Below are positions 1 to 61,595 of a DNA stretch of 64,000 nt, one piece after another. The DNA is from Macrostomum lignano (lineage: Eukaryota): the NCBI GenBank assembly GCA_002269645.1, contig NIVC01000769.1:186001-250000 (forward strand), given 5' to 3'. A program made the translations under genes and the position numbers. The notes beneath the pieces are model-generated. The model was not told the origin of the DNA, made no database searches, and was given only the letters and a program-made list of their open reading frames with translations. The stretch's first letter is position 1, and each line of letters starts with the position of its first letter.

Positions 1-437
1 AATTTAGTAGTATTAGTCCATTGTTGCCACTACATGTTGTGCTGGCATTTTGGTTCTTTGCATTTTTCAAGTCTGACAATTTACTCTTCTTTTCTCTATT
101 TTCCTCCCTCCCTGGCCTTTATTCTTTTCCTCTCTGTCTCTAATCCCTCAATCTCCCATTGTAGGTCTCTTATTTATCCTTAATCCTCTTGCTTCTTTAT
201 AGCATTTCTACTAAGCTAGAAGCTAGGAGCTACCTAATTAAGCTAAGAGCTACTTATCTAATTATTCAGTTATTCTTAATCAATAAGCCAACATATTTAT
301 TAGAGTTTTGCCATTTTAACTATTAAATTAATAATACCTAATTGGAAGCTGTATAATTTTATAAACTTTAATTTTTAAGTTATAAAAAATTATCACAATA
401 GACAAAAAACACTTGTCAAGCCTTTCATTTTCTGTAG

Positions 438-6090: not shown

Positions 6091-6291
6091 ATGTCCGGTT
6101 TGTTTAGGGAAAAAGATTTGCTTAGTTTAGGGTTGGACCTCAGGGTAGGTTAGGATGTGTTTCCATTTTTAACATGTGGGATATTGTGATAACCTACGAA
6201 GGGACCTTGTGATAGTATTAGCTACAGGGTAATATGTTTAGATCAGTTCAGATTTGACATACACGCATGCGAGTCGCTATTGGCTAAGAGA

Positions 6292-10400: not shown

Positions 10401-10687
10401 TTGGCCTGTCTGCGATTTCTCTGCAGTTTTTTATTTCAATATTCATTTTGTTGCCTTCTCTCAGCGATTAATAATTCCTATCAAGGTTAATTAGTACTGC
10501 ATCTTATAGTCCAGTACCGTCTCTCTGGCTTTGTTGTCTGTAAAAATGACCATTCCAGTGAGTTTATTTTCTTTTTCTGTATAAGATCTCGATTACAAAT
10601 TTAACTTACTCATTGTCTAAAAAGTCTGATGCGTTTTGCCAATAAGCAACTAAAAAAACCCTAATTACGATTTCCTTTATTCCGATT

Positions 10688-11005
10688 GAGTCAATGACCC
10701 GAATTCCAATGAGTCAATGACCCAAATTCCAGTAAGTCAATGACCCAAATTCCAGTGAGTCAATGACCGTAGTTCCAGTGAGTCAATGACCCAAATTCAG
10801 TGAGTCATGACCCAAATTTCATGAGTCAATGATCTAAATTCGAATGAGTCAATGATCTAAATTCGAATGAGTCAATAACCCAAATTCCAATGAGTCAATG
10901 ACCCAAATCCCGTACAAGTCATGACCCAAATTCCAATGAGTCAATGACCCAAATTCCCATGAGTCAATGACCCAAATTCCCATGAGTCAATGACCCAAAT
11001 TCCGA
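10688..11005. repeat. 23-bp minisatellite
   Basis: Unit GAGTCAATGACCCAAATTCCAAT, about 14 diverged copies. Confidence 0.9.
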
Positions 11006-11457: not shown

Positions 11458-11932
11458 GAAGCACCCCTGAAGGTGTGGAGAAAGTACCCCTGAAGGTGTG
11501 GAGGAAGCACCCCTGAAGGTGTGGAGGAAGCACCCCTGAAGGTGTGAAGGAGGCACCCCTGAAGGTGTGGAGAAAGCACCCGTGAAGGTGTGGAGAAAGC
11601 ACCCGTGAAGGTGTGGAGAAAGCACCCGTGAAGGTGTGGAGAAAGCACCCCTGAAGGTGTGGAGGAAGCACCCCTGAAGGTGTGGAGGAAGCACCCCTGA
11701 AGGTGTGGAGGAAGCACCCCTGAAGGTGTGGAGGAAGCACCCCTGAAGGTGTGGTGGAAGCACCCCTGAAGGTGTGAAGGAGGCACCCCTGAAGGTGTGG
11801 AGAAAGCACCCCTGAAGGTGTGGAGAAAGCACCCGTGAAGGTGTGGAGAAAGCACCCGTGAAGGTGTGGAGAAAGCACCCGTGAAGGTGTGGAGAAAGCA
11901 CCCGTGAAGGTGTGGAGAAAGCACCCCTGAAG
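11458..11932. repeat. 23-bp minisatellite
   Basis: Unit GCACCCCTGAAGGTGTGGAGGAA, about 20 copies. Confidence 0.96.
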
Positions 11933-13439
11933 GTTCGGTAAGGTTGCCCTATTTAACCGGGTGTTCTGTTTGTATATTTCACTTCAGCGTCACAAAAGCC
12001 ACGCTTTTCTCTGCTGCTCTTGCTGTTCTCTCTGCTCATTTGAGTTCTCGTGCTGACTAACCCGCCGTTGCCAATTTGATGCTGTTTTATTTCTCTGACT
12101 GAATATTCCATGTTCTAGCTGGACTCAGATGCGCTGAGTTGCTCGTCATTCCGGCGCGTGTTATCTGCAGATTGTGTTAAATTTACGTCACTTTTTTAAT
12201 TATGAAACGCTGGCGCACACGAAACAAGCTGTTTTTATTGATTATTTATCTTGCGTTTTTTCTATTTTCTCTTGGCTACACAGTGCACATGGATTTCATT
12301 GAAGCCAGGACTGATAGCAATAGTAACATAATGTTAATACAATTATTTCCGTAAAGTTTATATTCCAAAAATTCTAACGTTCTGGTACTACTCGGAATAG
12401 TAGTCATTGAAATTGGTTGGTTTTTATTTACATTTACGTGTTGGAATAAAGTGCCTCTTTCTAAGCGACAGCGACTGATTGCGCTGAACTTAATATCTGT
12501 TCTGGCCTAATGGGCATTGAGCGCATTCTTCTTTGTTTGTATTCTCTGATTTCTGTGTGCTGCAAAACTATGTTCTAATGCAATCTGAATAATTTTGGAT
12601 CAGGTTGTTTTGGCGGTAATTTTGACAGCAGTAAAAATCTCCGTAAAATCTCAGTAAAAAATAAAATTTCTGCTTCAGAAAACATGTTTGATAGAAAGCA
12701 TTCTACATATTTTTATAACTTTTTCGACTAGAAATTGAAAAAAAATTCAATCCAATAAAAAGCCGATTGGAACGAAAGAGCAGGCCGAATGGCTTGTAAA
12801 TAGTATCCAGGTATAGATTGGATGAGTATTTAAGACATAGGTATTTGCGCATGTTAATGTGTACATCGAAAATGCAAGGAAAAATCTCCAAAGCAAAAGA
12901 AGGAAATTAAAAGGACTGCTGTTTCTCCTGCTGCTATTTGGCTTGATTGATTAAACCAGGGGGCAGACTCTGGCCATCGGGTCCCTCCGGCCGAAACTTC
13001 ACCCTCAATCTGGCCTGCTATCTCTTATCTCGCCTATTCTCACATCTCCTCTCCGTTCCTCTCATGAGCTAGGTTCTTCATCTGAGGTGAAGTTTGGCGG
13101 TCCCTAGATTAGAGAACGCAATACATGTACATGCATTTTACACCCTGCGCATCTGGGCTTCCCGGCTGCCTCGGTCCGCCGGCCTCGGTGCCAGTCGGCG
13201 CAGCCTCGCCGACGAACCATGCGTGCGAGCGGCGTGAACGTCGCGCCCATTGGGCCCTTGGGTGGCCAGCCGACCTCCGTGGCCTTTTCATCCGAAGTCG
13301 TCAGCGAAACCGGCTGCAGCAGCTTCTTGAGCTGTGACTGCCGCGTGCTTTCTAGAAAAGCGAGGTTTTAGCAGAAATTGTGCTTCTTTAACCCTACATT
13401 TCATAACACGTAGACTAGGAGGTATTTGGGAAAGGAACC

Positions 13440-25859: not shown

Positions 25860-28032
25860 CGAAAGTATACGAGAGACGAGACGCAGCCCCCCTCAGCGGT
25901 TTGTCGACTATGCAGTGTTTTGGCTATTTTTAGTCGCCCTTTTCTGAGAAGCCAGCTCCAACCGGGGGATGCTGCGGGACCTGCAGCTTCATCTCGCGGG
26001 CCATATTTAGTTAAAGAAATGCCGTTTTAGAAGCGACCTCGCGTGCCCTCTATTTAGCCAGACTTTGCGAAGGATTTTTAGAGAAGCGGGAGAACAGGAG
26101 CGATAGCCTCCTTATGAACAGAAATAGACGAGCTAAAAAAAGTAACTGGGCGCACTTTTTGTGCAACGATCCCTATTAATAATTCCTTGATAATTTGTTT
26201 TGGAAATCTGTCCCATTAAGCCAGGCAGGCATAATAAAACAACCCCCCCCCGGGTTCCATTCTTTCATTACCGGGCGGCCCTAAATTTCCCATGAGCACG
26301 ATCGGGAATGTAAAAAATTGCAAAGCCGACGAGAGAGAATCGCTGAATGGGGAGGCCCAATACCATTAGCTGTAAACTGTATACTGGAGCTGGGGAGAAT
26401 CGACTCCCAAAATAGACGTCGGAATCTGCTGTTTGAGCTCAAAATAGACACCTGCCAGCTTCTTCGAGTACTGATTTCTAAAAAAACTGGAGCCTATTGT
26501 TTATCGCAGCTAGTCTCGCTGTACTCAGAGAGATCAAAACAAGCACAGGGAGATCAAATTTGCCAATGGTTGATCAGAAATGCTATACTACTGTATTGAA
26601 CTGAACAGCACACACAGTGCGTGGGCTCTGTCAATAGAAACATTGCTTTATAGCGACAGTTGGCCTGGCAACAAGAACATGTCATTTTTTCACGGCCGCG
26701 TACATACAGCCGCGTAGATTCCTTCCATTTCCTGTTCCCCAAGCCTGTATGGTACGACATTAGCTGTGCTATTTTTGCCCCTCCGTTGCAATATAAATCT
26801 GTACTTCTCGGCCCTATTCTTATCCGTAACTTGTAGGCGTGTGGAGCGGCCAGAACTGCGCTCGTACTCAAGAATAGGGAGGCCAAGCGGCGAGAACTGC
26901 GCTCGTACTCAAGAATAGGGAGGCCAAGCGGCCAGAACTGCGCTCGTACTCAAGAATAGGGAGGCCAAGCGGCCAGAACTGCGCTCGTATTCAAGAATAG
27001 GGAGGCCAAGCGGCCAGAACTGCGCTCGTATTCAAGAATAGAGAGGCCAAGCGGCCAGAACTGCGCTCGTACTCAAGAATAGGGAGGCCAAGCGGCCAGA
27101 ACTGCGCTCGTACTCAAGAATAGGGAGGCCAAGCGGCCAGAACTGCGCTCGTATTCAAGAATAGGGAGGCCAAGCGGCCAGAACTGCGCTCGTATTCAAG
27201 AATAGAGAGGCCAAGCGGCCAGAACTGCGCTCGTACTCAAGAATAGGGAGGCCAAGCGGCGAGAACTGCGCTCGTACTCAAGAATAGGGAGGCCAAGCGG
27301 CCAGAACTGCGCTCGTACTCAAGAATAGGGAGGCCAAGCGGCCAGAACTGCGCTCGTATTCAAGAATAGGGAGGCCAAGCGGCCAGAACTGCGCTCGTAC
27401 TCAAGAATAGGGAGGCCAAGCGGCCAGAACTGCGCTCGTATTCAAGAATAGGGAGGCCAAGCGGCCAGAACTGCGCTCGTACTCAAGAATAGGGAGGCCA
27501 AGCGGCCAGAACTGCGCTCGTATTCAAGAATAGGGAGGCCAAGCGGCCAGAACTGCGCTCGTACTCAAGAATAGGGAGGCCAAGCGGCCAGAACTGCGCT
27601 CGTATTCAAGAATAGAGAGGCCAAGCGGCCAGAACTGCGCTCGTACTCAAGAATAGGGAGGCCAAGCGGCCAGAACTGCGCTCGTACTCAAGAATAGGGA
27701 GGCCAAGCGGCCAGAACTGCGCTCGTACTCAAGAATAGGTAGGCCAAGCAAGCAGGGGGTCGCTAGCACCTCACCACAGTGATGAAGCCTTCCCGCAGCT
27801 CCTGGTGCATCAGGCTCCTGCGCTCGGCTGCGGGCCTGTCGCGATGCGGCGAATAAGCGATCTGCGGGATTGGGATTACACGGGTTGCTATGGAAACACC
27901 CGCCTCGTTGCCAAGTTGCCAAAAAGCAGATATTAAATCAGGATAAACTCTTACCGGATTATCTTCGGCTAATTGTTTCAACAAATCGTCGTGTTGAAAT
28001 TTGCGCCACTGATCTGGCACAACCTTCGGCAT
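18967..28032 (-). CDS. CBFB: Core-binding factor beta subunit (Runx cofactor, Brother-like) with low-complexity C-terminal extension, 275 aa
   Basis: Exons 28032-27955 (78 nt, MPKVVPDQ..), 27861-27775 (87 nt), 25395-25276 (120 nt), 20640-20524 (117 nt, IRLKSRFILNGVCVQWQGYMD..FDADRAE), 19392-18967. All junctions are phase 0 GT-AG, and exon sizes mirror vertebrate CBFB (78/87/117/117). Confidence 0.93.
19525..20160. repeat. G-rich compound minisatellite (CBFB intron 4)
   Basis: Successive 31-bp and 15-bp units rich in GGGG runs. Confidence 0.9.
21295..21560. repeat. 20-bp minisatellite
   Basis: Unit CCAATGTCCAATTCGGCACC, about 12 diverged copies. Confidence 0.9.
22638..22892 (-). pseudogene. 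Degenerate BED zinc-finger-like fragment (hAT-type transposase N-terminus?)
   Basis: KRQRRSACTVWYYFT..TKCESS..GT..LWSRL resembles the BED pattern S.VW.YF..C..C..GT..L..HL, but the second Cys and the His are substituted. Confidence 0.35.
24228..25130. repeat. 13-15-bp C-rich minisatellite (CBFB intron 3)
   Basis: GTCTGACT followed by a variable C run, about 60 copies. Confidence 0.95.
25806..25852. repeat. (GA)n microsatellite
   Basis: GA repeat. Confidence 0.95.
26846..27747. repeat. 41-bp minisatellite (CBFB intron 2)
   Basis: Unit GGCCAGAACTGCGCTCGTACTCAAGAATAGGGAGGCCAAGC, about 22 copies, ending about 27 nt from the exon-2 donor. Confidence 0.97.
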
Positions 28033-28740
28033 GCCGGGCCTTAGAAGCTTTAGCAGTGAGCTTAAAACAGGTTCAATATCACGCATTATTGGCGCATTGA
28101 ATGCCTTTCCCGTTCGGCCCTTGGCTCGGGCGTCTTCGGTCTGCAACTGGGAGCGGTGCTCGTCTCTAAATCGGTGGATTCTCCTGCCAATTCTAGTCAC
28201 GGTTTTATATAGGCTGAACCCTTTCAGAAAGTGTGTGGAATTGGTTAAGAGGAGCAGGGGCTTCCCCCGGGGTAAGCTGCCCGCTGATTCGCTGGGCGGA
28301 TTCTCGGCGGCCAAATATGGCTATTGGATTCCCGTGTGCTATTTTTAGCATGCCGTGCACCTCCCCGGGCCGCCCCAGCCATTTACATATCTATGCATAC
28401 GAATAGACTAGCTTGTGATATTCCACAATAGGGATTCGCCAGTGGAAGGGGAGGCAGGGGATGAGATGTGAGCGGTCGGTACTCTCCAGTCAAATAGGCT
28501 ACTCTTGTGGGCAGAGAAGAGAGTGAAGTACACTTATCCGCCCACCTGACGGGGAGTAAAGGAAATAAGGTGATTGAAATGGGAATTAATTAATCGTTGA
28601 AAACATACAAATTTGGTCTGGCCCTAAATAATTGATTCAGGAAGCTTTGAATATCGGCCTAAGCAATAATCACACAGAATAATTTGTTATTATTTGGGGA
28701 TACTCGTTGTGAAGACACCCTGGGTTAGGTGAGTTTCCCA

Positions 28741-35308: not shown

Positions 35309-38300
35309 ATGGGCTGGTTCACAACTGTCCGAGCGCTGCTTGTTCGCGCCCTGTTCGCCACCCACGGCATTGTGACCATAGCCTACCTTCACCGGCAGAC
35401 CCGCAAGCCGCAGTACTGGTACCTGGCCGCCTCAGTGGCCGGTCTGCTGCTGGAGTCCATCGTCACCTTTGGGGCCAATCGAGGTCGAGAGTGGAAGTGG
35501 TGAGTCACCTGAAGCATGGAGAGTGGAATGCTGTTTACCATTTAGGAAGCTGGCGTCTAGTTTCATGAAGTGTCATTTCCTCATCTCAAAAGTCTCATCT
35601 CATATCTAAGAAAATCAATATAAAATCGAATTTGTAATCTCCACAGGGTTGGGAAAATATCCCGGTAAATCTGAACACAACCGAGCTAAAACAGCTAATT
35701 TTTGTGCACGCACTGCCTGTTTGTATTAATGGCCGTTCGCAGAAAGATCACTGAACTGACTGAAGAGTATTTGTGTACTGTAGTGGCTCGTACAAGCTGC
35801 CCAGTTGGAGGCAAATCTGGACTATTTGGAGGTTGGGCAGGGACGACTGGCAAGAGCTAAATCCCAATCTTTCAATCTTTCCCAATGCCCCTAACCGCAG
35901 AGTTCTTGAGAGCGTCATTAATTGTTCTCAGCTTCCTGCAACAATGCGATATTGAAGCCCTGGTCTGCCGACTGCGCTACCAAAAAATCTATATAGAAAA
36001 CCGGCTTTGCTCGCTTCATTTGGCGGCTGATCGATCGCTGTTTGATCCCGCTCTGGGGCTCTCGAGCCGGGGACGCAGGGATATCGCAGATGGGATATTG
36101 CCACAGGGAGCAGCACACACACTAGGAGCCAGAGAGGAGCCTAAATGTGCTGCCTCAATCCGGAGTCGCCACAAAGCGGCTAATTGACCTGCAGCCGCCG
36201 CGAGGCCGCCCTCCATCCACAATTCCGCCCTCCGGAACCAATCTAATTCCCAAGCTGGTGCGCCGCTCCGGCTGCCGAGATTATCTCAGTGGAGTTCTAA
36301 TGTATCTTTTATACCCTTCCCTTCACGGAGTTGAGGGCTATTGCCGATGTCAGACCGCAAGGCATAAACAATGACCCCTATCTATAAAGCCAACTTGAGG
36401 TCTATTGTGTCTGGCTTAGCTACAGAGTCCATAGTCGACTGAGTTCAGTCGCTGCCAAAACGATATTCGTTAGCTCAACCATCACAGATGCCCCGGTTTA
36501 CCTATTGTGACGTGGTGCAGCATGCATGTTTCGGGAGACATCGTTTTTGGCAGGAAGCAACGCGTGCGTGAGTGCAGCGTGCCATTTTGATGACAATCGT
36601 CTGTCTGACACTGCAAGGATGGTAATTCGATTATATCCGATTGTCAGCATAGAGCCATAGTAATGGGAGAGACATACGAACTGAAACTGCAATGATGAGT
36701 TGCTTTAATTTGTCAATCAATAATCTTACTGGTCTGTATATTTATTTATTACGCCATAAATAAACAAATAAATTTAGTAAACAGTTTTAAAATGGAGAAA
36801 ATGATTGCAAAACCAGAGAAGAAAAGTACATGTATAAATTATAAATTCAGCTTTGTTCTGCATTCCAGTTAGGAGCCAACAGCGCAAACACGTGTCCCTA
36901 GGGGTTCTCAAGTCCTTAATGCATAACTGGGTAGGTACGTTTACAGTAAGTGAAGTCAGGAAAGGGTCAATCTCCAGTATGTATCGGAAATAATAATCTA
37001 CTCTACTGGGGTAAGTGAAAAGTAGACGAAAATAAAAGAAGACTGTGATTCAAATCAAAGGTATGTTTAATTCCGGCTCATCCTAATGAAGTGGAGTTGC
37101 ATTTCTGGCACTACTTGCTTGGCTCAGTCGCATTCAGAGCTGCGACGAGGTACCAGCTACTATGCACCTCGAAGAGATGAAGAAGGCTCCCGTGATGGGT
37201 TCTTATTGCCCTCAAATCCTGTGAAAAACATCAACTGCAATAATTTTACAGGTTTTGTCCGTACGCATTTTTTTACTTGCTGATCACTGTGCCGGCCACC
37301 TGGTTCCTGGAATTGGAACTGGTCGAGTGGCGAATCGAGTGCAACAACACTTACAAGACTACGGACGATATGGTGTGTCAAGCCAAGCGAATGGGCAATG
37401 TGTCAGTGATAGTGAGTTTCATTGAACTAGCTGTTTCAGATACAGTGCGGCCGATGAGCCAGGTTTTATGATTTTACTTGCAAGTTATAATTTGCCTATC
37501 TCTATGTTTCACCGCTTAGAAGAATACACCACACGAGCTGGATTTCCTGGAGACGCAGAACTTTGAGCAAACAATCCGGCGTCTTGAGCAACTGCTGCTT
37601 CTACTGCTGATCTTGGGCCGCTGGATGCTGCCCAAGGGCAAACTGACGCACGATCAGCTGTCTCAGCTTCTGCTGGTCTACATCGGCACCGCAGCCGATA
37701 TTGTCGAATTCTTCGAGGCTTTCAAAGAGGAAGCCGTGAAGCGGGATCGCAACCTCATCAAGCTGATCCTCAGCATCTGGACTTGGTCGCTGTTGCAGTT
37801 CGTGCTGGTGGTGACGGCGCAGCGGGCTACCAAGCAGCGCCAGCCGGATAAGCCACTGTCCGCCTCGGCAGAGGCCGCAGCCGCTGTGGCCGCCACGGAT
37901 CCTGATCAGGCCTACTGCGTGTGCACACCCGACGTTCTTGGTATAGTGATGTCCATGATGCTGCAGGACCTGCCCTACCTGATCATCCGTCTCTACATGA
38001 TGTTTAACTACAACACCACCAGCTATACGAATGTGTTCTTCACGCTGAAGAATTCCCTCGTGTGTAGCCTGCTCACCTACCGGCTGTGGGTTATCTACTC
38101 CACCCGCTTCCGCCTAATCAGCAAGGCACGACGGATACGGCGAGCGGCGCGTAACTTTGATTTGATGGCTGCCGCCGAGGCCGAAGGCGAGTCTGGCAGC
38201 GGCCCAACCGCCTTCAGGATGCGACGCCTTCTCCAGCAGCGTCGAGCAGCCGGTCACGGCCACTTGGTGGCCTCCCGGTCCCTGGCCTTCGATCCATCAC

Positions 38301-38464
38301 CCACGTCTACTCTGAAGGGCGAGAGCTCTTCGCAGAGAGCTGCAGCGACCATGGCTGCGGATGCCGAGATGGTGGTGGCTGCTGAAGCCGAAGACAAGTT
38401 CCGTCTGGTGCGGCCAAAGTCGGCGCCGATTCAACTGGCCGAACCGGAGGACGAAGAAATTTAA
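35309..38464 (+). CDS. TMEM26: Transmembrane protein 26, 431 aa
   Basis: Exons 35309-35499, 37252-37411, 37520-38464. Motifs VRALFATHG, RGREWKWFCP, GRWMLPKGKLTHDQLSQLLLVYIGTAADIVEF, IWTWSLLQF and QDLPYLIIRL match the TMEM26 family. Confidence 0.92.
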
Positions 38465-44602: not shown

Positions 44603-47600
44603 ATGGCCGATTCAAACAAACAGTATCAGCAGCCGCCGCCTGTTGGTTTTGCGCCTGGCTATGGCCAGCCTCAGCAGGGCTATGGACAACCCCAGCCGGG
44701 CTACGGACAGCCTCAACAGGGCTATGGCCAGCCTCAGCAGGGCTATGGCCAGCCTCAGCAGGGCTATGGACAACCCCAGCCGGGCTACGGACAGCCTCAG
44801 CAGCAAGGCGGCGCCCCCGCAGCCGCCGCTCCGGGCCAGGTGGTGTGGATGAACCGCCCGGCTCCGATACCCGGCTGTCCGCCCGGACTGGAATACCTGA
44901 CCCAGGTTGACCAGCTGCTGGTGCACCAACAAATCGAATTATTGGAGGTGTTCACCAATTGGGAGACTAAGAATAAATATCAAGTTAAAAACAGCATGGG
45001 CCAACAGGTAATTATTTGCTCGAGTTCTTGAATTTTAGTCCGACTGCGATATAACAAATTGATATTTGTAGTGTAATGCTGTGCACCAGACTGCAACGCC
45101 TTATCGTTACGGCCTCATTGTCCCATCTTTGCATTAGCCCCACCGTAGTCGATAGCGTAACGGATTTTACTTTGCAACCCATCAAGATAGTGGGGCAGAA
45201 GAGAGGCAATCAAGGCTTCATCTTTCTTATTCCCGACCGCCACTTCCCTCTTTCCCCAATGCATACCATGGTTCCAATGCACAGCTGCTGTCTGCATCCC
45301 ACAGTATTGGTTACATAGCGTATCGGCTGCCTTGCTTTGTAGTTGTACTTTTAACTCGTATTGGTATATCCACTGTGGTGAATTCGCGGGAACTCTGCGC
45401 CTTTGCTTTTTGTATCGCATCGATCCGAGACTGAGACCATTAATTAGAAATGCGTGTTGACACCAGGCTCAGATAGGGTGGACTACAGAGGGAGATAAAT
45501 GAGGGCGGAGAGGTAGATGAAAGAAGATCATCGGATTAGATAAATGCTAGCAGGTAGAGTATATACAGAGCTTGTATAAGAATATACCGGTGTAAAGGAG
45601 ACTATATAAAGGAGAGCCGGTAGAGTAGATAAAGAAGAGTGGTAGAGTAGATGATAGAGTTCTGATAGAGTAAATAAAGGAGAGTTGATAGAGTACATAA
45701 AGGAGAGCGGATAGAGTACATAAAGGAGAGCGGATAGAGTACAGTACATAAAGGAGAGCGGATAGAGTACATAAAGGAGAGCGGATAGAGTACATAAAGG
45801 AGAGCGGATAGAGTACATAAAGGAGAGCGGATAGAGTACATAAAGGAGTGCTGGTAAAGTAGATGAAGAAGAACGGGTAGAGTAGATAACGGAACGGTTC
45901 ATCCCGCCTCTCTTTGCCAACCTCGCCGCAGGTGTACTTCGCTGCTGAAGAATCAGACGTTTGCGCCCGGCAATGCTGTGGGCCACAGCGCGGCTTTGTA
46001 ATGCACATCACGGACAACCTGGGCTCCGAGGTGATCCGGGTCACTCGCGAATTCAAATGCCTCGCCTGCCCGGGCTGCTACTGCCTGGCTGGGGCCGACG
46101 CCTGCGCCCACGAGCTGCAGATCGAGGCCCCGCCCGGCACCGTTGTTGGCTACGTGCGCCAGGAGTGCTCCTGTCTGGAGCCGCGCTACGAGATACAGAA
46201 CGCCGATAGGCAGGTTGTGCTGTTGATTAGGGGACCCGTCTGCATCTGCCAAGGACCCTGCTGCACCTGGGATCAGGAGTTCAAGGTCTGTTTGTACTCT
46301 TGTTGGGCCAGTGGTTTTTTGTTGATTTTAGAGTTTTTGGCGTTTATATTTCCTAACTTCCTGACGCGTCCCTTACCCTATCCCTTCCATTCCCTAATCC
46401 ATCTCATCTCCATTCATTCCCTCACTTCTTCCCCCATTCATTCCCTCACTCCTTCCCTATTCATTCCCTCACTCCTTCCCCATTCATTCCCTCACTCCTT
46501 CCCCATTCATTCCCTCACTCCTTCCCCCATTCATTCCCTCACTCCCCTTCCCCTCTATTATTTCCTTTCCTTCTCACTCCGTCTCGTTCGTTTCGATCGT
46601 TGACTGCTTGAGTCTGATACAAGTCAATTAGGAGCTCGCGGTGTTTCCGCTAGGTTTGGCAGACTAAAATGCTTAAGGTGCGCCTGCTGCTGCTAACCGC
46701 TTTTCCTCCAGGTGTACTCGGCGGACATGGCCCACGAGGTTGGCAAAATTAGCAAGCAATGGTCTGGCTTCATTCGTGAATACTTTACGGACGCTGACAA
46801 CTTCGGCGTATCGTGTGAGTAACGCTTGCAGGCTGTGTAGAGTTAGTTTTATACTAGTTGTACTTTACCCCTTCTTTGAAGTGTTTTGCCATTGATTTTG
46901 CTTCTTTCAGTCCCAATGGATCTGGACGTGAGAATGAAGGCCACCATGATTGGCGCCGTGTTTTTAATTGTGAGTGCTTTTATTTGCAAGTCAAATTGTT
47001 CACTTCTTAATCTTAGAGCACCTTAAGTACTATTCTATTCCATTAGAAGCAAACCAGGTATTCCATTAGGAGCAAACCAGGTATTCCATTAGGAGCAAAC
47101 CAGGTATTCCATTAGGAGCAGTCCAAGTATTCCATTAGGAGCAGCCCTGGTATTCCATTAGGAGCAGCTCAGGTATTCCATTAGAAGCAAACCAGGTATT
47201 CCATTAGGAGCAAACCAGGTATTCCATTAGGAGCAAACCAGGTATTCCATTAGGAGCAGCCCTGGTATTCCATTAGGAGCAGCTCAGGTATTCCATTAGG
47301 AGCAGCCCTGGTATTCCATTAGGAGCAGCCCTGGTATTCCATTAGGAGCAGCTCAGGTATTCCATTAGGAGCAGCCCAGGTATTCCATTAGGAGCAGACC
47401 AGGTATTCCATAAGGAGCAGACCAGGTATTTAATTGAGAGGAGCTCAGGTATTTCATTAGTGCAGTCCAGGTATTCACATTATTAGCAGCCTATATATAC
47501 AGTAGTAGGTGCAGTCCAGTTATTATTATTATTATTAGCAGCCCATGTGTTACATTAGGAGCACCCCAGGTAATTTACTACTTGTAGGAACACCTCAGGT

Positions 47601-52923: not shown

Positions 52924-55900
52924 TCACTTGCCAGGCCTGAGCACATTCTGTCGGAAGCTGCTCATCACGTTGCCGCTGGGATAGTAGTAGCAGACAACCA
53001 CAACCTTGTGCGAACCGTCCGCAGCCCGGTGAATCGCCTTGCCGACGCCCAGCTCCTTGGAGTTCTTCCACACCAGCTGGGTGAAGTTGCCTGGCATTGG
53101 ATTGGCGATTGTTTGTCTACTTGAAGTAGTCTAACTGGAGTAGACCATGCTATTAGTTGAGAATTCTTTACTTGAGATTTATAAAGACTGTCCATAGCCA
53201 AACTTCCACTCGCTTCCATACCGGTCACAGACACTTCTACACCGGTTACAGGCACGCTTTCACACCGGTCACAGATACGCTTCTACACCGGTCACTGACA
53301 CGCTTCTACACCGGTTACAGACACGCTTCCACACCAGCCTGGTACATTCTCTATGCCAATACTTACACACAGAAATCATAGACAGTTTCCATAATAATTA
53401 TTCTAAAATCAAAGTCGATAAATCCGTACAATCACCTCGGAAAAAAACTTACAATGGCTTCAAAGATATTCGCAAGTGTCTCTCGAAAGCTACACGTGCT
53501 GTGAGCCTTGGATATGCAATACAGTTAAATCTCTTGCTCATCTTGCTAGCGAAACTCACTACGCTCGTACTAGCTCGTATTTAGATTGGCACTTACCAAT
53601 TCCATTGATATCGGAGGGCTCCTCGTTATATCGAAATTTCTCCACCTCGTTGTACCAGTGGTCCACCACGTCGATGGCTGCAAAATGGCATATGATTCAA
53701 CTATGATTTGATACGAGTAAATTAGATTAGAAGCCTTTTTGCTCTTAGATTTATTATTTTAAGCTCGTCCCAGCCCAAGCCTAGTCCCGCAGCAAAGCCA
53801 TGCAGAGAGAGTCCCAAGTTCCCAGTCCCGCAGCCAGCCAGAAACAGTCCCCCAGTCCCGCAGCACAGCTAGAGGCAGTCTCAGTTCCATGGGTCTCAAA
53901 ATAAAGCCAGAGAGACAGTCCCGGTCTCCAGGCCCGCTCATAGGCCGCACCATTGTAGTCGGTCTCGCCGTTACTCCAGCGGCTGGCGATGTTCTCGCCC
54001 AGCCTTTCCGTCCCGTGAGTGGCGCTGCTGTTGTACAGCTTGGACTTGCCGCACAGCTCGGTGGCGAATGCCTGCGCCTTGGCTGACAGCTCCGCGTTCA
54101 GAGCCAGCCCGGGAACTCCGTGCTGCATCCGGTGATGGTTGTGCCGCTCCAGCACCTCGTGGCCGAATTGGGACATTTGGCTTTCCTAAACGATGGGTTG
54201 GTTCAGCCGTGTTGGATTTATTGTCTGTGTGCGATTAGTTGCATAGGGATTGTCCTAGGGCTGGGGTGGAATCTTGTCTAGTCTGTGACCGCGGTGTGGA
54301 AGCGTGTCTGTGACCGCGGTGTGGAAGCGTGTCTGTGACCGCGGTGTGGAAGCGTGTCTGTGACCGCGGTGTGGAAGCGTGTCTGTGACCGGTGTGGAAG
54401 CGTTCTGTAACTGGTGTGGAAGCGTGTCTGACCGGTGTGGAAGCGTGTCTGTGACCGGTGTGGAAGCGTGTCTGTGACCGGTGTGAAAGCGTGTCTGTGA
54501 CCGGTGTGGAAGCGTGTCTGTGACCGGTGTGGAAGCGTGTCTGTGACCGGTGTGGAAGCGTTCTGTAACTGGTGTGGAAGCGTGTCTGACCGGTGTGGAA
54601 GCGTGTCTGTGACCGGTGTGGAAGCGTGTCTGTGACCGGTGTGGAAGCGTGTCTGTGACCGGTGTGGAAGCGTGTCTGTGACCGGTGTGAAAGCGTGTCT
54701 GTGACCGGTGTGAAAGCGTGTCTGTGACCGGTGTGGAAGCGTGTCTGTAACCGGTGTGGAAGCGTGTTTGTGACCGGTGTGGAAGCTGGTCTGTGACCAG
54801 TATGGAAGCTGGTATGTGACCGGTGCGGAAGCGTGTCGGTGACCGGTGTGGAAGCGTGTCTGTGACCGGTGTGAAAGCGTGTCTGTGACCGGTGTGGAAG
54901 CGTGACTGTGACTGGTGTGGAAGCTGGTCTGGAAGTCTCAACTGCTTGAAGAACATTTGTTATTAATTTTCAATATTTTCAAAGATTTCTTTGCGAAACT
55001 GATTGATTTACGACTCCACAGCAGGTGGTTCTCCTGCTACCAGGGTCCGGCATATTGCTTGACCAGTCAATATCTGCTCTTGTCAAGTCCGATTTGACTC
55101 ATGCATGAGGAATTCAATTTCGCAAGTTGAGGCAGTTGATAAGGGAAAAAGGAAAATAAATGAAAAAACTTTCTGAGGAAATTAAAAAATTCTTTCGTGA
55201 CTTCAGAGCAGAATGCTTTTGCGCGTCAAATTATTTTCGCAATATCCGGTGCCCAGCAGCTCCTCCGCCGACTCACCGTGGCGTCCAGAACTTTGCCTTG
55301 CGTTGCTTGCTGCTGCTTCTGCTGTTGCTGCTGTTTTTCCGGTGGCGGCCTCAGTTCCGGCTTCTCCTGCCGACGCTCAACGATTTTCTCTTTCTCCTGT
55401 TGGGTTTAATTTAGTGCGGCTGATAATTCAGGGTGGCTCGCTGATTTCATTTTCAGGGAAGCTATGCGTCTTAAGCAAAGAGTTCATAAACAAAGAAAAT
55501 TTCGAGTAAGCTTAATTGACTGATTGAGCCCTTCAGTTTAGTTCAGTTTAGTTTAGGTTAGTTTAGTTTAGTTTAGTTTAGTTCAGTTTAGTTAGTTTAT
55601 TATATTTTAGTTTAGTTTAGTTTAGTTTAGTTGGTTTATTTTAGTTTAGTTTAGTTTAGTTTAGTTTAATTTAGTTCAGTTTAGTTCAGTTTAGTTCAGT
55701 TTAGTTAGTTTATTTTAGTTTAGTTTAGTTTAGTTTAGATTAGTTTAGTCTATTCTAGTCTAGTTTAGTCTAGTTTAGTTCAGTTTAGTTTGTTTTGTTT
55801 AGTTTAGTTCAGTTTAGTCTAGTTTATTTTAGTTTTGTTTTGTTTTGTTTTCTTCAGTCTAGTTCAGTTTAGTTTAGTTTACTTTACTTTAGACTTGTTT

Positions 55901-57953
55901 CCAAGAGTTTAGGTGGGCTAAGCTAGACAGGCAGACCTTAGGTAGGCAACTTAGGAAAGTTTTGTTCAGACAAGTGAAGCCTAAGACTCTCTTCTCCCGC
56001 GCGCCCCTAGGACCCCCGCTGTCTCACATTTCCCTGCTCGTCCACGTAGCGAATCCGCTCCCGTTCAACCACAAAAAGTCGGCCATCCTCGCCGCGGACC
56101 TCCTCCCGTTCAATTTTGCTGCTGGTGACGCGGCAGCCGGCGGCGGCCAGCTGCTTGGTGACGTCCGAGCCCGCCGACTCCACCGGCCGAACGTTGGCGA
56201 CGTAGCGGCCGCGCACGTTGCCAGGAGGTCGGTAGTGCGCCACCACCACCACCCGGCTGCCGCTCTGGGCGCGCCCGACGCCAACCTCGCGAGTTCCCAG
56301 CCACACCAGCTGGGTGAAGTTGCCGGCCTTGCCGCTGCCGTCCGCGAAGTTGTACTTGTCGATGTCGCGGTACCACTGGCTGACCACCTCTTCGGCTGGG
56401 AATGGAGAGTGGGCCAGCTCTGGAGTAAGACTGGGCCGTTTCTAGAGTGAGACTGGCATGGCTCGGGGATGAGACTGGTCCGGCTCTGGGGTGAGACTGG
56501 ACCGGCTCTGGGGTGAGACTGGACCGGCTCTGGGGTGAGAATGGGCCGTTTCTAGGGTGAGACTGAGTCAGCTCTAGGGTGAGACAAGATTAGTTGGCTC
56601 TCTAAGATGGGACAAGCTCTAGTTCAAGGTGAGATATAATAACTCTGGCTTCAAAGACAACAGAAGACCAACTGCGAAGTGAGGATACGACCAAAACTAA
56701 TCCAAGGCGAACCAAATAGATTTTAATACGGCCAGATGAAATTCTGGACCGAGACTGGGCCGGCTTCGCTATAGAAGAGGCCCTGTTGACGTTGAAGCCC
56801 ATGCTAAACCCGAATTATTCTGTGCAGTTTACAGCTAGAAATTTTCCAACGCGCATTTTCCAGATTGGAACAGGGCCGGCCGCCTGTGGCAAAACTTGCC
56901 AACGCGAGCTCGCGCAAATACCGATCGATGTGCGAAGTTGTTGCACACCCGAAAGCCGAGGCACTGAATGGGGTCACAGCACAGTCGGTCCGGCGCTTCA
57001 TTCATTTATGCTGGTTGGGCTTCTCGAATCAGACTAAGCCACCCTTTTGCCCAGACTGACTTGCTTGCCACTTGGATGGAGGGCGCAGATCAGCTCTGCG
57101 GTAACACGCGTCTGGCTCTCGCGCCACGACCCCCGCATTCATTTGGGGGCTTGACCGGGAGGTTGTCGTGCGATTCGCAGCCATGAAGACTAACCAGCCA
57201 AGGCACAGAGAGTGTACATGACTGAGGATTAGAAAGTCAGGGCCGCTGTGCACCCTGTGTGAGCGTGTGCTTGAGTGCGTGCCTGCGGACAGTATTGGCG
57301 CTTGTCAGGAGTCAGCGGAATGGGCACAATTGCCTCAACGCTGGCTGTGGGACGATGTCGAGTGTCAGAGCCGTCTCACCTGAGATCTCGGCTGCCTGGC
57401 CCTCGGCGCTCCGCATGCTGATGCACTCGCCACATTCGCCTCGCTTGGCCTCGGCGCTGTTCTCCAAGCTGCCCTTGGCCGCCAGGGCCTCCGCCCAGGC
57501 CTGCGCCGTCCGGTCAAGGTCGCTGGCAGCTCGGAGAGCCGCTGCACCGTGTAGGGCCCGGCGACTGTTCTGCTGCTGCATCAGCGACTGGCGGAACTCT
57601 GACAGACTCATGACCTGCGGTGTGTCAGTGTGGGAGGGGACTGGCAGAACTCTGACAGACTCATGGCCTGCGGTGTGTCAGTGTGGGAGGGGACTGGCGG
57701 AACTCTGACAGACTCATGGCCTGCGGTGTGTCAGTGTGGGAGGGGACTGGCGGAACTCTGACAGACTCATGGCCTGCGGTGTGTCAGTGTGGGAGGGGAC
57801 TGGCGGAACTCTGACAGACTCATGGCCTGCGGTGTGTCAGTGTGGGAGGGGATTGGCGGAACTCTGACAGACTCATGACCTGCGGTGTGTCAGTGTGGGA
57901 GGGGACTGGCGGAACTCTGACAGACTCACGGCCTGCTGAGCGGTGGGACCCAT
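52924..57953 (-). CDS. GAPR-1/GLIPR2-like CAP (SCP/TAPS, group-2 VAL-type) protein with two CAP domains, about 409 aa, no signal peptide
   Basis: Exons 57953-57930 (putative, MGPTAQQA), 57614-57380, 56395-56028, 55396-55277, 54185-53951, 53677-53597, 53090-52924, with consistent phases. Two copies of the HG..L..AQA..GE..WY..FTQLVW..GVG..VV..Y.P.GNV pattern are joined by a charged/Gln linker. The start may instead be the ATG at 57611. Confidence 0.88.
53211..53335. repeat. 23-bp minisatellite, inverted copy of the 54281-54925 array
   Basis: Unit ACGCTTCCACACCGGTCACAGAC is the reverse complement of GTCTGTGACCGGTGTGGAAGCGT. Confidence 0.9.
54281..54925. repeat. 23-bp minisatellite (CAP-gene intron)
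   Basis: Unit GCGTGTCTGTGACCGGTGTGGAA, about 28 copies. Confidence 0.96.
55535..55890. repeat. (TTTAG/TTCAG)n pentamer microsatellite
   Basis: 5-bp periodic AGTTT repeat. Confidence 0.93.
56445..56585. repeat. 22-bp minisatellite
   Basis: Unit GAGACTGGACCGGCTCTGGGGT, about 6 copies. Confidence 0.8.
57082..57360 (+). mobile_element. tRNA-derived SINE family A, near full length, in CAP-gene intron
   Basis: Head, body and 3' tail (CAGGAGTCAGCGGAATGGG) are collinear with the 59770-60050 copy. The B box is deleted. Confidence 0.75.
57587..57936. repeat. 53-bp tandem repeat spanning a splice junction
   Basis: Units start at 57587, 57640, 57693, 57746, 57799 and 57852, with a partial unit at 57905. 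Confidence 0.97.
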
Positions 57954-58479
57954 GTGTGACTAGTGACATTTTTACCTATCAGATTAGAATGGCACACTGG
58001 AAAAACTACCTACGAGTATTAGTATCCATTGCTCTGCCTCTTAATCCCCAACGATCGGGCGAACGCTTATCCAGCTTTGTATCTGCACTCGAGTGAAATT
58101 AATTAAACCCGAGCAGAGATTGGTGGCCTGAATTGTTGACACAGGTGACAGCGCATGCGCGACTATGTAAAGTTAGACGATAATTTGGACGATAAATCAA
58201 AGCTTTTTCACGTCGTTTCTCTACCATGTCTCTACCTTTGCTTGGTCTCTTTGTCGTTCCTTTACTATCGATTTACTTACTAGTCACAGGGGGTAACAGG
58301 GGGACTGCTTCGTAAGTCTGCTCACGTGGTTTGTGCGCGCAATTAACGCGGAAGATGATTTCATGGATAGCCGGTTTTCGTTGCAAGATGCAGTAGCGAG
58401 ATGGGAGAGGACTTCAGTTTTGTAGCACTAAATTGGCCATATCTCGCCTTCCGAGCCTTGGGATTGCAGATGAAGCAAG

Positions 58480-58610
58480 TGTGCGACTGCGGGCCTGCGT
58501 ACAGTATTGGCACGCTTGCATGCGCTTAGGAGTCAGCGGACTGGGCAGAATTGCCTCACCGCGTGGTTGTGGGGGCGATGTTGCCGAAGACATTGCGCCA
58601 GGCTGCCTGA
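58480..58610 (+). mobile_element. SINE family A, 5'-truncated tail-only copy
   Basis: CAGTATTGGC..AGGAGTCAGCGGACTGGGCAGAATTGCCTCA matches 57287-57345. Confidence 0.6.
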
Positions 58611-59769: not shown

Positions 59770-60050
59770 GCAAAAACTTAACACAACCAGCGGTCGATTC
59801 CACCCATTTCACTGACTCCTGAGCACACGGATACACAGGGTGCACAGCAGTCCGGACTTTCTAATCGTCATGCATGTGCACTCTCTGTGCCTTAAGGCTG
59901 GCCCTCATGGCTGTGAATCGCATGACAACCTCCCAGCCAATTTTCGTGCACACGAGCCCCAAATGAATGCGACCGCGCACGGAATCGAACCGGGGGTCGC
60001 CGCGCGAGAGTCGGACGCGTTCCTGCTCCGCTGAGCTGCTCCGTCCACAT
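59770..60050 (-). mobile_element. tRNA-derived SINE family A, most intact copy
   Basis: Minus strand: A box GGAGCAGCTCAGCGG, tRNA-Glu-like CTCTCG loop, intact B box GGTTCGATTCC (59991-59981), then the shared body and tail. Confidence 0.82.
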
Positions 60051-60419: not shown

Positions 60420-61450
60420 TCAGACTGTGTCTGCGTCGATCCACTCGTCCACGGTTTCGAAGTCCACTGACCCGTTGGTGGCTGAAGCTGCGCGCTCCCG
60501 CACTTTGTTGGTTGCCTCTGCGGGCACCAGCGGGATGAGCTCTGGCTGGGCCGGAGGCTGCTGCGGCACATTCTGCTGCTGCTGCTGCTGCTGTTGCAGC
60601 TGTCTTTGACGAACCCGAGCCTCGTTGCTAGCCGTCGCTTGAGGAGCCTCCGCCTCGTCGGGCGCTAGCAACCGCGTGCAGCCAAGCAGCCGGAACAGCT
60701 CGGTACGGAAGCTGTCGTTCAGGAAGCCGTAAAGCAGCGGATTGGCGCAGCTTGACAGTAGGATGAGCATCAGCGAGACGCTCTGGATCAGCTGCAGTGG
60801 CACCTGCTGGCGGTTGATGCGGTCCGACTGGCCGTCCGTTTGAGTTGCGTTCGTCAGGTCGATGCGCCACTCCTGTGGAAATGTTGGCGGGTCTATGCAG
60901 CTATTTGCTTGTCTATCTGTTTACCTACCTACCTACCTACCTACCTACCTACCTACCTACCTACCTACCTACCTACCTGAAAGTCGTTGAAGATGTTGAA
61001 CACGGTGAGGGGCAGCCAGGACAGGGCGAACAGCAGGCTGATGGCCAGCAGAATGCCGTTGGTCCGCCGGTGCCGCCGCTTCTCCAGCTGGATGCGGCTG
61101 AGCTGGTAGGCGGACTGGCCGCTCTCCCGCCTGTGGCGGATTCTCTCCCTAAGCCGGGCGTGGATGCGGCCGTAGGCGGTCACCAGCATCAGCAGCGGGA
61201 TCAGGTACTGGACGACCATGGTGGCCAGGCTGTACACCAGCTTGGCCTGTCTGAGCAGTCGGCTAGACGAATCCGACGGGATGATCTCGCTGCAGATGTG
61301 CACCACCCGGGGCAGCTCCAGCGCGTTCTGCACCACCCGGGCGAACAGCAGCAGCGGCGAGGCCAGCAGGGCGGCAGCCGCCCAGATGCCCAGGGCGCAA
61401 GCCAGGAGGCGACCGCGGGACAGCGACAGCTGGCTGGGGTGCACGATCGC
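60420..61450 (-). CDS. Rhodopsin-class neuropeptide GPCR, NPY/NPF-receptor-like, 5'-partial (end of TM3 loop to C-terminus)
   Basis: Exons 61450-60977 (AIVHP..IWAAAALLASP..C.E..QYLIPLLML..LSWLPLTVFNIFNDFQ) and 60872-60420 (SSCANPLLYGFLNDSFRTEL). WLPLTVFN and NPLLYGFLN are NPY-receptor-like. No TM1-3 exons were found in the window. Confidence 0.88.
60922..60977. repeat. (TACC)14 = (GTAG)n on the GPCR sense strand, at the donor site
   Basis: 14 copies abutting the exon end at 60977. Confidence 0.95.
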
Positions 61451-61595
61451 CTGCGGACGGGTTTTGTCGTGATGTGCATCCCCATCCCTACGGTGCAAGT
61501 CGGATTTTTATATCGAGATATAAAGCTGCTGAATTATGCGACTTGTGAGTGATCTCTTGGTGGATGCAGCCCACAGATACTACGCTCGTATATGC

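What the first reader, a model, noticed from the sequence alone, without database searches (positions are those of the whole stretch)
57587..57953. An intron built entirely from tandem copies of its own splice junction (candidate intron birth by tandem duplication)
Seen in the sequence: on the sense (-) strand each 53-bp unit is a branch-like CTGAC, an acceptor CGCAG, and the first 28 nt of the CAP exon (GCCATGAGTCTGTCAGAGTTCCGCCAGT). This gives seven stacked acceptors, at 57615, 57668, 57721, 57774, 57827, 57880 and 57933. In the most distal copy ATGAGT has become GTGAGT, a perfect donor at 57929. It is preceded by an in-frame ATG at 57953 (MGPTAQQA), whose phase 0 matches the proximal acceptor at 57614. 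Splicing 57929 to 57615 removes a 315-nt intron made only of repeat units and restores the ORF. Established knowledge: tandem duplication of exonic sequence containing splice signals is a proposed but rarely observed route to new introns. Inference: this is either a newborn intron or an acceptor array where only the last AG is productive.
Basis: partly seen in the sequence, partly recalled or inferred. Interest (0 to 1): 0.85.

Follow-up and report, generated by a model that had tools for sequence, protein, structure and literature searches.

The report
Minisatellite copying a gene's start
A 53-base stretch holding a splice-acceptor-like signal, the start codon and the first 26 coding bases of a flatworm CAP-domain gene has been copied head-to-tail 6.6 times just upstream of the gene; this is a real, fast-changing repeat in a very repeat-rich genome, but the evidence favours a discarded leader over a newborn intron.

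Summary
A 53-bp unit in 6.62 copies at 97% match lies at 57586-57936 on the minus (sense) strand.

The genome is Macrostomum lignano (Mlig_3_7). About 25% of this window is tandem arrays, and 30-39% of this species' genes are SL trans-spliced.

The gene is a two-exon, 206-aa GAPR-1-like CAP protein with no signal peptide. Two cestode orthologues, two M. lignano paralogues and human GAPR-1 all begin at the position of the proximal ATG (57611). None has an extra N-terminal exon.

The genome holds three near-identical copies of the locus, with 6.6, 14.5 and 15.6 units. The GTGAGT "donor" is present in two copies and is ATGAGT in the third. That third copy still has an intact ORF.

The best reading is a hypervariable minisatellite born from the gene's own 5' exon edge. 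It sits in a non-coding leader or outron, and only the last acceptor and ATG are productive. The leader is probably removed by SL trans-splicing, but that step is inferred.

A cis intron in the G-bearing copies is not excluded, at about 0.15. No transcript data could be reached. Interest is moderate to low.

The parts
57586..57936 (-). 53-bp minisatellite of 6 full units plus a 33-nt partial unit. Each unit carries an acceptor-like ...CTGACACACCGCAG, then G(C/T)C, then ATG and 23 further nt of the CAP coding sequence.
   Evidence: TRF, unit-by-unit split, sequence.
57924..57929 (-). GTGAGT in the distal unit. It is a potential 5' splice site created by an A-to-G change in a copied start codon. 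It is present in the window copy and in C692:~84.5k, and absent (ATGAGT) in C692:~429.8k.
   Evidence: Donor consensus GT[G/A]AG from PMC8629364.
57930..57953 (-). If unspliced it opens a 26-codon uORF.
   Evidence: No counterpart in orthologues or paralogues.
57615..57638 (-). Proximal acceptor region CCCTCCCACACTGACACACCGCAG, with the AG at 57616-57615. This is the only acceptor followed by an open CAP reading frame. It is a candidate SL trans-splice site, and the SL's terminal ATG would be in frame (ATG|GTC ATG AGT).
   Evidence: Sequence. SL sequence and acceptor motif from PMC8629364. SL RNA genes in this genome.
57380..57611 (-). Coding exon 1 of the CAP gene (CAP-A), 232 nt from ATG 57611. 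It ends ...TCAG|GTGAGA, in phase 1.
   Evidence: The start is collinear with orthologues, paralogues and GAPR-1.
56396..57379 (-). Intron 1, 984 nt, GTGAGA...CCCAG. It contains a 22-bp minisatellite (56405-56585) and a dispersed repeat (57077-57358).
56007..56395 (-). Coding exon 2 of CAP-A, covering the rest of the CAP domain and a C-terminal tail. The stop codon TAG is at 56009-56007.
   Evidence: Pfam CAP PF00188, E=2.8e-14.
57608..57876 (-). Chain of five 18-codon uORFs (MSLSEFRQSPPTLTHRRP*). Each TGA overlaps the next ATG (ATGA), and the last overlaps the true start. These uORFs exist only if the array stays in the mRNA.

Best explanation
The feature is a young, hypervariable minisatellite. 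It arose by tandem duplication of the 5' edge of the first coding exon of a GAPR-1-like (group-2 VAL-like, no signal peptide) CAP gene of the flatworm Macrostomum lignano. It has since expanded and contracted by unequal exchange or slippage.

The array is non-coding. The true start codon is the proximal ATG at 57611, or the spliced leader's own ATG two codons upstream of it. The upstream units are decoy copies of the acceptor and start codon, lying in the part of the primary transcript that is thrown away.

The most likely way the decoys are removed is SL trans-splicing at the proximal acceptor (57615). Trans-splicing needs no cis donor. It can act again on a molecule already spliced at an upstream unit, so the last acceptor is the end state however many units precede it. 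That would explain how copies with 6, 14 and 15 units all keep an intact gene.

Shown: the anatomy, the copy-number variation, the start-codon position by homology, and the presence of SL RNA genes. Inferred: that this particular acceptor is trans-spliced, and where transcription starts.
For: - **Array and units:**
- **Organism:** G000 has 764,410,778 bp in 5,269 contigs, against Mlig_3_7 at 764,424,962 bp in 5,270 scaffolds including the mitochondrion. The M. lignano SL followed by GTAAG is found 30 times exactly.
- **Repeat background:** 24.6% of the window lies in 45 tandem arrays. The genome paper reports 15% simple and tandem repeats.
- **Published context:** repeats accumulate in the intergenic spacers of M. 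lignano operons, between trans-spliced genes (PMC8629364).
- **Three genomic copies** carry 6.62, 14.51 and 15.57 units. The window copy and C692:85k are 99.7% identical from about -530 nt to +3.8 kb, yet differ by 8 units.
- **Intact gene in all three copies:** each has a 206-codon ORF and the same splice sites.
- **Start position:** cestode orthologues begin MNDNEEF and MSDNDEF, aligned to MSLSEF. The paralogue at C2030 begins MFKSNDLKVFRQS, with an AG 8 nt upstream and no repeat. Neighbour CAP-B begins MSQFGHEV, with an AG 9 nt upstream. GAPR-1 residues 7-151 align to residues 4-148.
- **Donor polymorphism:** the donor G is missing in the 15.6-unit copy.
- **Trans-splicing rule:** an acceptor near the 5' end without an upstream cis donor is sufficient for trans-splicing (Conrad 1993, as cited in PMC8629364).
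Against: - No transcript evidence for this gene could be reached. Exact look-ups and homology searches returned nothing from this species.
- The acceptor CCGCAG does not match the top SL-acceptor motif [T/C]TNCAG at the T. That motif covers only 9,551 of 21,754 sites.
- Only 30-39% of genes are trans-spliced, so the prior is below one half.
- In two of the three copies a consensus donor does lie upstream. By the same Conrad rule, that donor would favour cis-splicing if it is transcribed.
- Between the divergent copies the CDS differs at 3 nonsynonymous and 2 synonymous sites. Purifying selection on every copy is therefore not demonstrated.
Confidence: 0.55

Rival explanations
1. Newborn cis intron. 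In the copies carrying G at 57929, transcription starts upstream of 57953. GTGAGT pairs with the last acceptor (57615), removing a 315-nt intron made only of repeat units. Translation from ATG 57953 then gives MGPTAQQAV followed by the CAP protein. A milder form has the same splice acting as a 5'-UTR intron, with translation still starting at 57611.
For: - GTGAGT fits the species' donor consensus GT[G/A]AG.
- The phase-0 junction and open frame were verified.
- A donor introduced upstream of a trans-splice acceptor is known to convert an outron into an intron (Conrad 1993, as cited).
- Intron gain by tandem duplication is experimentally established (PMC3265369; PMC4974935 and PMC2891723).
- Introns arising from tandem arrays are reported in humans (Zhuo 2007, cited).
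Against: - The donor is absent in the third copy, which has 15 units and an intact ORF.
- No orthologue or paralogue has an N-terminal extension or an upstream coding exon.
- ATG 57969 precedes 57953 and is out of frame.
- Five identical acceptors lie between the donor and the productive one. The first is only 50 nt away, and all five give premature stops.
- The only mutated ATG is in the edge unit, where arrays diverge fastest. This fits neutral drift.
Confidence: 0.15
2. The array is not spliced out. One form has it remaining in a long 5' leader, where a chain of overlapping uORFs (ATGA stop-start overlaps) throttles translation in a copy-number-dependent way. The other form has it lying upstream of the transcription start as a promoter-proximal VNTR, so it is simply not in the mRNA.
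For: - Each unit is an 18-codon uORF in a reasonable start context (G at -3), and its TGA overlaps the next ATG.
- A TATA-like TAAAAAT at 57974-57968 lies 45 nt upstream of the distal unit's start position (my reading). This would suit an ancestral short leader.
- The paralogue has a canonical TATATAAA 90 nt upstream of its ATG.
Against: - With 6 to 15 consecutive uORFs the main ORF would be almost untranslatable, yet all three copies keep the ORF.
- No core-promoter element inside the unit scores above chance. The only Inr-like match is a degenerate consensus (my reading).
Confidence: 0.22
3. The locus is silent or decaying. It would be one of several redundant copies in a hidden polyploid, and the array would have no consequence at all. 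Alternatively, the copy number is an assembly error.
For: - The genome has about 180 Mb of duplicated blocks at 95% identity or more.
- The CDS differences between copies are 3 nonsynonymous to 2 synonymous.
- No annotated protein for this gene was returned by the protein search.
Against: - The ORF, both splice sites and the conserved CAP residues are intact in all three copies.
- The array appears in three separately assembled loci with distinct variant units. At 351-825 nt it is far shorter than the PacBio reads used for the assembly.
Confidence: 0.08

Closest known systems
Minisatellite / VNTR at a gene's 5' end
   Same: The unit is 53 bp in head-to-tail copies. Copy number differs among near-identical copies (6.6, 14.5, 15.6). 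Variant units are interspersed, and the array changes far faster than its flanks.
   Different: The unit is not anonymous DNA. It is the gene's own acceptor-like sequence plus start codon plus 26 nt of CDS, so every copy is a decoy splice site and a decoy start.
Intron gain by tandem duplication of an AGGT-containing exon segment (Rogers model; Hellsten et al. 2011, PMC3265369; potato RdRp, PMC4974935; Drosophila cases, PMC2891723) and human introns from tandem arrays (Zhuo et al. 2007, cited in PMC2812944)
   Same: Exon-edge sequence carrying splice signals is tandemly duplicated. A donor in an upstream copy and an acceptor in a downstream copy could remove whole repeat units.
   Different: - The candidate donor is not a duplicated AGGT. 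It is a point mutation of a copied ATG, present in only 2 of 3 copies.
- The duplicated segment straddles the start codon, not an internal exon.
- The spliced product would not restore the ancestral mRNA. It would add 9 codons that no relative has.
- No transcript evidence is available.
SL trans-splice acceptor and outron of flatworms and nematodes (M. lignano SL, PMC8629364; outron-to-intron conversion by an added donor, Conrad et al. 1993)
   Same: The organism has SL RNA genes. An AG acceptor lies 3 nt upstream of the start codon. Repeats are tolerated in operon spacers upstream of trans-spliced genes. One copy has no cis donor upstream.
   Different: The acceptor is repeated 7 to 16 times. 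The sequence CCGCAG departs from the top motif YTNCAG. Use of the site by SL is not shown.
GAPR-1 / GLIPR2 and platyhelminth group-2 VAL proteins (PMC3435950, PMC5422958)
   Same: There is a single CAP domain and no signal peptide. The start is collinear with human GAPR-1 (1SMB, E=3e-23). The protein is 43% identical (44% by the search's own BLASTP) to cestode SCP-domain proteins.
   Different: It has a C-terminal tail of about 55 residues shared with the cestode proteins, and it lacks GAPR-1's N-terminal myristoylation glycine.

Membership tests
Minisatellite / VNTR | Tandem head-to-tail copies of a 10-100 bp unit | tested here: met
   Period 53, 6.6 copies, 97% match.
Minisatellite / VNTR | Copy number varies between alleles or copies while the flanks stay nearly identical | tested here: met
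   There are 6.62, 14.51 and 15.57 units in three loci. The flanks of the window copy and C692:85k are 99.7% identical.
Intron gained by tandem duplication (Rogers model) | Donor and acceptor both derive from one duplicated AG|GT motif | tested here: not met
   AGGT occurs only in the GTC-variant units, where it gives the weak donor GTCATG. The only consensus donor comes from an ATG-to-GTG point change.
Intron gained by tandem duplication (Rogers model) | Splicing restores the ancestral reading frame and protein | tested here: inconclusive
   The frame is restored, but with 9 extra N-terminal codons that cestode orthologues, paralogues and GAPR-1 lack.
Intron gained by tandem duplication (Rogers model) | Transcripts show the repeat removed at those sites | not testable with these tools
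   No M. lignano transcript data could be reached.
Intron gained by tandem duplication (Rogers model) | Splice signals present in all functional copies of the gene | tested here: not met
   The C692:429.8k copy has ATGAGT at the donor position and an intact ORF.
SL trans-spliced gene (outron plus acceptor) | The organism has SL RNA and trans-splicing | tested here: met
   There are 30 exact SL+GTAAG sites in G000. Between 30% and 39% of genes are trans-spliced.
SL trans-spliced gene (outron plus acceptor) | An AG acceptor lies close upstream of the start codon with no cis donor upstream | tested here: inconclusive
   The AG is 3 nt upstream of the ATG in all copies. There is no donor in one copy and a GTGAGT in two.
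SL trans-spliced gene (outron plus acceptor) | Top acceptor motif [T/C]TNCAG | tested here: not met
   The site reads CCGCAG. The motif is present at only 44% of known SL sites.
SL trans-spliced gene (outron plus acceptor) | SL-bearing reads map to the acceptor | not testable with these tools
   The SL-read track exists at gb.macgenome.org but cannot be reached here.
CAP / SCP / PR-1 superfamily, GAPR-1-like | CAP domain profile match | tested here: met
   PF00188, E=2.8e-14, residues 14-132. 1SMB, E=3.3e-23.
CAP / SCP / PR-1 superfamily, GAPR-1-like | No signal peptide; the domain starts within a few residues of Met1 | tested here: met
   MSLSEFRQS... aligns from residue 4 to GAPR-1 residue 7. 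No upstream phase-0 exon with a signal-like peptide was found in 2.5 kb.

The most novel reading that the evidence does not exclude
In the two genomic copies that carry G at the distal unit, a single A-to-G change in a duplicated start codon may have created a consensus 5' splice site upstream of a stack of duplicated acceptors. That would turn what is otherwise an outron or leader into a true cis intron made entirely of copies of the exon's own 5' edge. The third copy (A) would keep the donor-less state. One animal genome would then hold both the before and the after of an intron birth. This would be a natural replica of the classic nematode outron-to-intron conversion experiment, and it could be tested allele by allele with existing RNA-seq.
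Probability: 0.15. Interest if true: 0.7.

Novelty: new member of a known kind. Interest (0 to 1): 0.35.

Why it matters
If the ordinary reading holds, this is a clean illustration of how a trans-splicing, repeat-swamped genome tolerates minisatellites that duplicate splice acceptors and start codons. Everything upstream of the last acceptor is discarded.

It also serves as a warning for gene prediction in M. lignano. Stacked decoy ATGs and acceptors will mislead ab initio models.

If the rarer reading holds, the locus offers donor-plus and donor-minus copies of the same gene in one genome. That would be a direct, allele-specific test of intron gain from a tandem array. M. lignano has a working transgenesis method (PMC5730564), so reporter constructs with 0, 1, 6 or 15 units could be tested.

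Tried and rejected
- **Transcript or protein evidence.** An exact look-up of the SL-initiated product MVMSLSEF... found nothing. Homology searches with the full protein and with the exon-1 ORF returned only two cestode proteins and one distant hit. Records of the window's own genome appear to be withheld.
- **Supplementary tables.** The M. lignano papers held no per-gene annotation of this locus.
- **An older, degenerate part of the array further upstream.** Rejected: the local alignment of the flank to the unit is no better than shuffles.
- **A duplicated exon fragment upstream.** Rejected: the upstream similarity (58479-58581 and 59822-60047) is a dispersed repeat shared with intron 1. It stops 21 nt short of the exon.
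- **A hidden signal-peptide exon upstream.** It is not signal-like.
- **A coding repeat.** Rejected: the unit length is not a multiple of 3, and stops occur in all frames on both strands.
- **A structured RNA.** No Rfam family matches at the array.
- **A myristoylation motif in MGPTAQQA.** It does not fit the usual G-{EDRKHPFYW}-x(2)-[STAGCN] pattern (my reading; no tool was run).
- **An operon with the upstream GPCR gene.** This is unlikely. The spacer is about 2.8 kb, or roughly 2.1 kb after subtracting repeats, against the published 1-kb criterion.
Full report
**1.

Tandem Repeats Finder reports a 53-bp period, 6.6 copies, 97% matches and no indels at 57586-57936. On the minus strand the array reads as six full units plus a 33-nt partial unit.

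- The unit is GCAGG(C/T)C-ATGAGTCTGTCAGAGTTCCGCCAGTC-CCCTCCCACACTGACACACC.
- The AG dinucleotides end at 57933, 57880, 57827, 57774, 57721, 57668 and 57615.
- The ATGs lie at 57876, 57823, 57770, 57717, 57664 and 57611.
- The distal unit has GTGAGT at 57929.
- ATG 57953 opens MGPTAQQA, which ends in phase 0 at 57930. The span 57929..57615 is 315 nt.

Three small corrections apply. The stretch shared with the real exon is 29 nt after the AG, not 28. The proximal unit reads GTC rather than GCC. The array begins sharply at GCAG, and the flank upstream is unrelated to the unit (311 of 500 shuffles score at least as high).

**2. The gene.**

The array abuts a two-exon gene on the minus strand.

| Part | Coordinates | Note |
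|---|---|---|
| Exon 1 | 57611-57380 | Starts at ATG 57611 |
| Intron 1 | 57379-56396 | GTGAGA...CCCAG, 984 nt |
| Exon 2 | 56395-56007 | Ends with stop TAG |

The 206-aa product matches Pfam CAP (PF00188, E=2.8e-14). Its closest solved relative is human GAPR-1 (1SMB, E=3.3e-23). GAPR-1 residues 7-151 align to residues 4-148, so the protein starts where GAPR-1 starts and has no signal peptide.

Its best database relatives are two cestode SCP-domain proteins. They are 43% identical in the alignment (44% by the search's own BLASTP) and cover 97% of the query. They begin MNDNEEF and MSDNDEF, aligned to MSLSEF. This is the intracellular group-2 VAL type described for flatworms (PMC3435950, PMC5422958).

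**3. The organism.**

The cestode hits point to a flatworm. The assembly has 764,410,778 bp in 5,269 contigs. The published Macrostomum lignano Mlig_3_7 assembly has 764,424,962 bp in 5,270 scaffolds including the mitochondrial genome (PMC5730564). The 35-nt M. lignano spliced leader followed by its GTAAG donor occurs 30 times exactly in the genome.

Three published properties of this species bear on the finding.
- Simple and tandem repeats make up 15% of the genome, and about 180 Mb is present as duplicated blocks at 95% identity or more, because the species is a hidden polyploid.
- Between 30% and 39% of genes are SL trans-spliced. The cis-donor motif is GT[G/A]AG, the cis-acceptor motif is CAG, and the SL-acceptor motif is [T/C]TNCAG.
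- Repeats accumulate in the intergenic spacers of operons, between trans-spliced genes.

In this window 24.6% of bases lie in 45 tandem arrays. An array touching a gene's 5' end is therefore not surprising in itself.

**4. Three copies of the locus give a natural comparison.**

The unit occurs at only two other places in the genome. Both are on contig C692, and both sit in front of near-identical copies of the same gene.

| Copy | Units | Distal unit | ORF |
|---|---|---|---|
| Window (C769) | 6.62 | GTGAGT | Intact, 206 codons |
| C692:84.5-85.3k | 14.51 | GTGAGT | Intact, identical protein to the window copy |
| C692:429.0-429.8k | 15.57 | ATGAGT | Intact; 3 nonsynonymous and 2 synonymous differences |

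The unit counts and distal-unit states come, and the ORF comparison. The arrays carry interspersed variant units of 51-53 nt.

The window copy and C692:85k are 99.7% identical from about 530 nt upstream of the array to 3.8 kb downstream, yet they differ by eight units. The array therefore evolves far faster than its flanks, which is the defining behaviour of a minisatellite.

The proposed donor G is shared by the two copies on that common haplotype block. It is absent from the third copy (ATGAGT). Because the copied sequence is the start codon, A is the ancestral state. The G is a single later change in the edge unit.

**5. Where the protein starts.**

Besides the cestode orthologues and GAPR-1, two M. 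lignano paralogues were read.
- The nearest divergent paralogue is present in three copies, on C2030, C2997 and C3167. It is about 52% identical and has the same intron position. It begins ATG TTC AAA TCC AAC GAT TTG AAA GTG TTC CGC CAG TCG, with no repeat. An AG lies 8 nt upstream of the ATG, and a canonical TATATAAA lies 90 nt upstream.
- The neighbouring CAP gene in the window (CAP-B, ATG 54176) begins MSQFGHEV, with an AG 9 nt upstream of the ATG.

In every relative the first Met lies a few residues before the first CAP helix. None has an N-terminal extension or an upstream coding exon.

A scan of 2.5 kb upstream found no phase-0 exon with a signal-like peptide. ATG 57611 is therefore the start, and MGPTAQQA has no counterpart anywhere.

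**6. Consequences for the rival mechanisms.**

*If the array stayed in the mRNA.* The leader would carry a 49-codon uORF (ATG 57969), a 26-codon uORF (ATG 57953) and five 18-codon uORFs. Each 18-codon uORF ends in a TGA that overlaps the next ATG, and the last overlaps the true start. With 15 units this would nearly abolish translation. The array is therefore probably removed or not transcribed.

*Cis-splicing from 57929.*
- It is sterically and sequence-wise possible.
- However, it is impossible in the donor-less copy.
- It must skip five identical acceptors, the first of which is only 50 nt away. Using any of those five gives a premature stop.
- Once the single donor is used, the choice is final.

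*SL trans-splicing.*
- It needs only an acceptor (Conrad 1993, as cited).
- It can act again on a molecule already spliced at an upstream unit. The proximal acceptor is therefore the end state regardless of copy number.
- The SL's terminal ATG would be in frame (ATG|GTC ATG AGT).
- This is why I rank trans-splicing first. It remains an inference: CCGCAG lacks the T of the top SL motif, and no reads could be inspected.

**7. Comparison with what is known.**

The structure meets every tested criterion of a VNTR.

It resembles intron gain by tandem duplication (PMC3265369, PMC4974935, PMC2891723; Zhuo 2007, cited in PMC2812944). It fails two defining features tested here. The donor does not come from a duplicated AGGT, and the donor is not present in all intact copies.

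The outron-to-intron conversion idea links the two readings. In the G-bearing copies a transcribed GTGAGT would be expected to compete with the SL. That is the novel case, at about 0.15.

**8. Verdict.**

The feature is real and tidy, and it is interesting as a natural experiment. On present evidence it is one more minisatellite in a genome full of them, sitting in a discardable leader. I rate interest at 0.35 and class it as a new member of a known kind. Existing RNA-seq would settle the question in an afternoon.

Noticed in passing
window 53211-53335 and 54281-54931: Two arrays of the same 23-bp unit lie in inverted orientation, with arms up to 110 nt at 89% complementarity. They bracket exon 1 of the neighbouring CAP gene CAP-B (ATG 54176, exon-1 ORF 53784-54185, minus strand). 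One array is upstream of its start and the other is in its intron. If both are transcribed, they could pair and loop out the exon.
   Followed up: partly
window, whole (e.g. 5099-6132, 10679-11003, 11459-11934, 45599-45893, 46410-46545, 47036-47491, 53211-53335, 54281-54931): 24.6% of the window lies in 45 tandem arrays. At least eight arrays have a period of exactly 23 bp; all but the inverted pair at 53211-53335 and 54281-54931 have unrelated unit sequences. Several others have periods of 29-31 bp. The preference for these periods is unexplained.
   Followed up: no
about 500-560 nt upstream of the array (window ~58440-58500) and the matching sites in L011 and L012: The pattern of shared variants among the three genomic copies switches here. 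Further upstream the two C692 copies agree (99.6%). From here through +3.8 kb the window copy and C692:85k agree (99.7%), and C692:429k is the odd one out (94%). This is either a recombination or gene-conversion junction between homeologues, or an assembly haplotype switch.
   Followed up: partly
G000 C692:84,546-85,314 (+) and C692:428,953-429,777 (-): Two of the three copies of the CAP locus lie in opposite orientation on one contig, 344 kb apart. This is either a large inverted duplication or a chimeric join in the assembly.
   Followed up: no
window 57077-57358, 58479-58581, 59822-60047: A dispersed repeat, probably a transposon fragment, sits in intron 1 of the CAP gene. It also occurs twice upstream, once direct and once inverted, at 76-82% identity.
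   Followed up: partly
window 56007 to 54176 (minus strand): CAP-A and CAP-B are tandem paralogues 1.8 kb apart, and about 1.0 kb of the spacer is tandem arrays (55535-55892 and 54281-54931). The repeat-adjusted distance is therefore under the 1-kb operon criterion of PMC8629364. If CAP-B's AG at 54186 is an SL acceptor, the SL ATG would be in frame there too.
   Followed up: no
window 7862-7931 (+): A tRNA match (Rfam RF00005, 32.6 bits) lies between two fucosyltransferase (GT10) exon ORFs at 6822-7655 and 9957-10397. It is apparently inside that gene's intron.
   Followed up: no
window 379-648 (+), 27766-28320 (-), 37520-38461 (+), 45890-46600 (+), 60423-61507 (-): Other gene fragments were recognised by Pfam: TBCC-like, CBF-beta, TMEM26, phospholipid scramblase, and a rhodopsin-family GPCR upstream of the CAP gene on the same strand.
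   Followed up: partly
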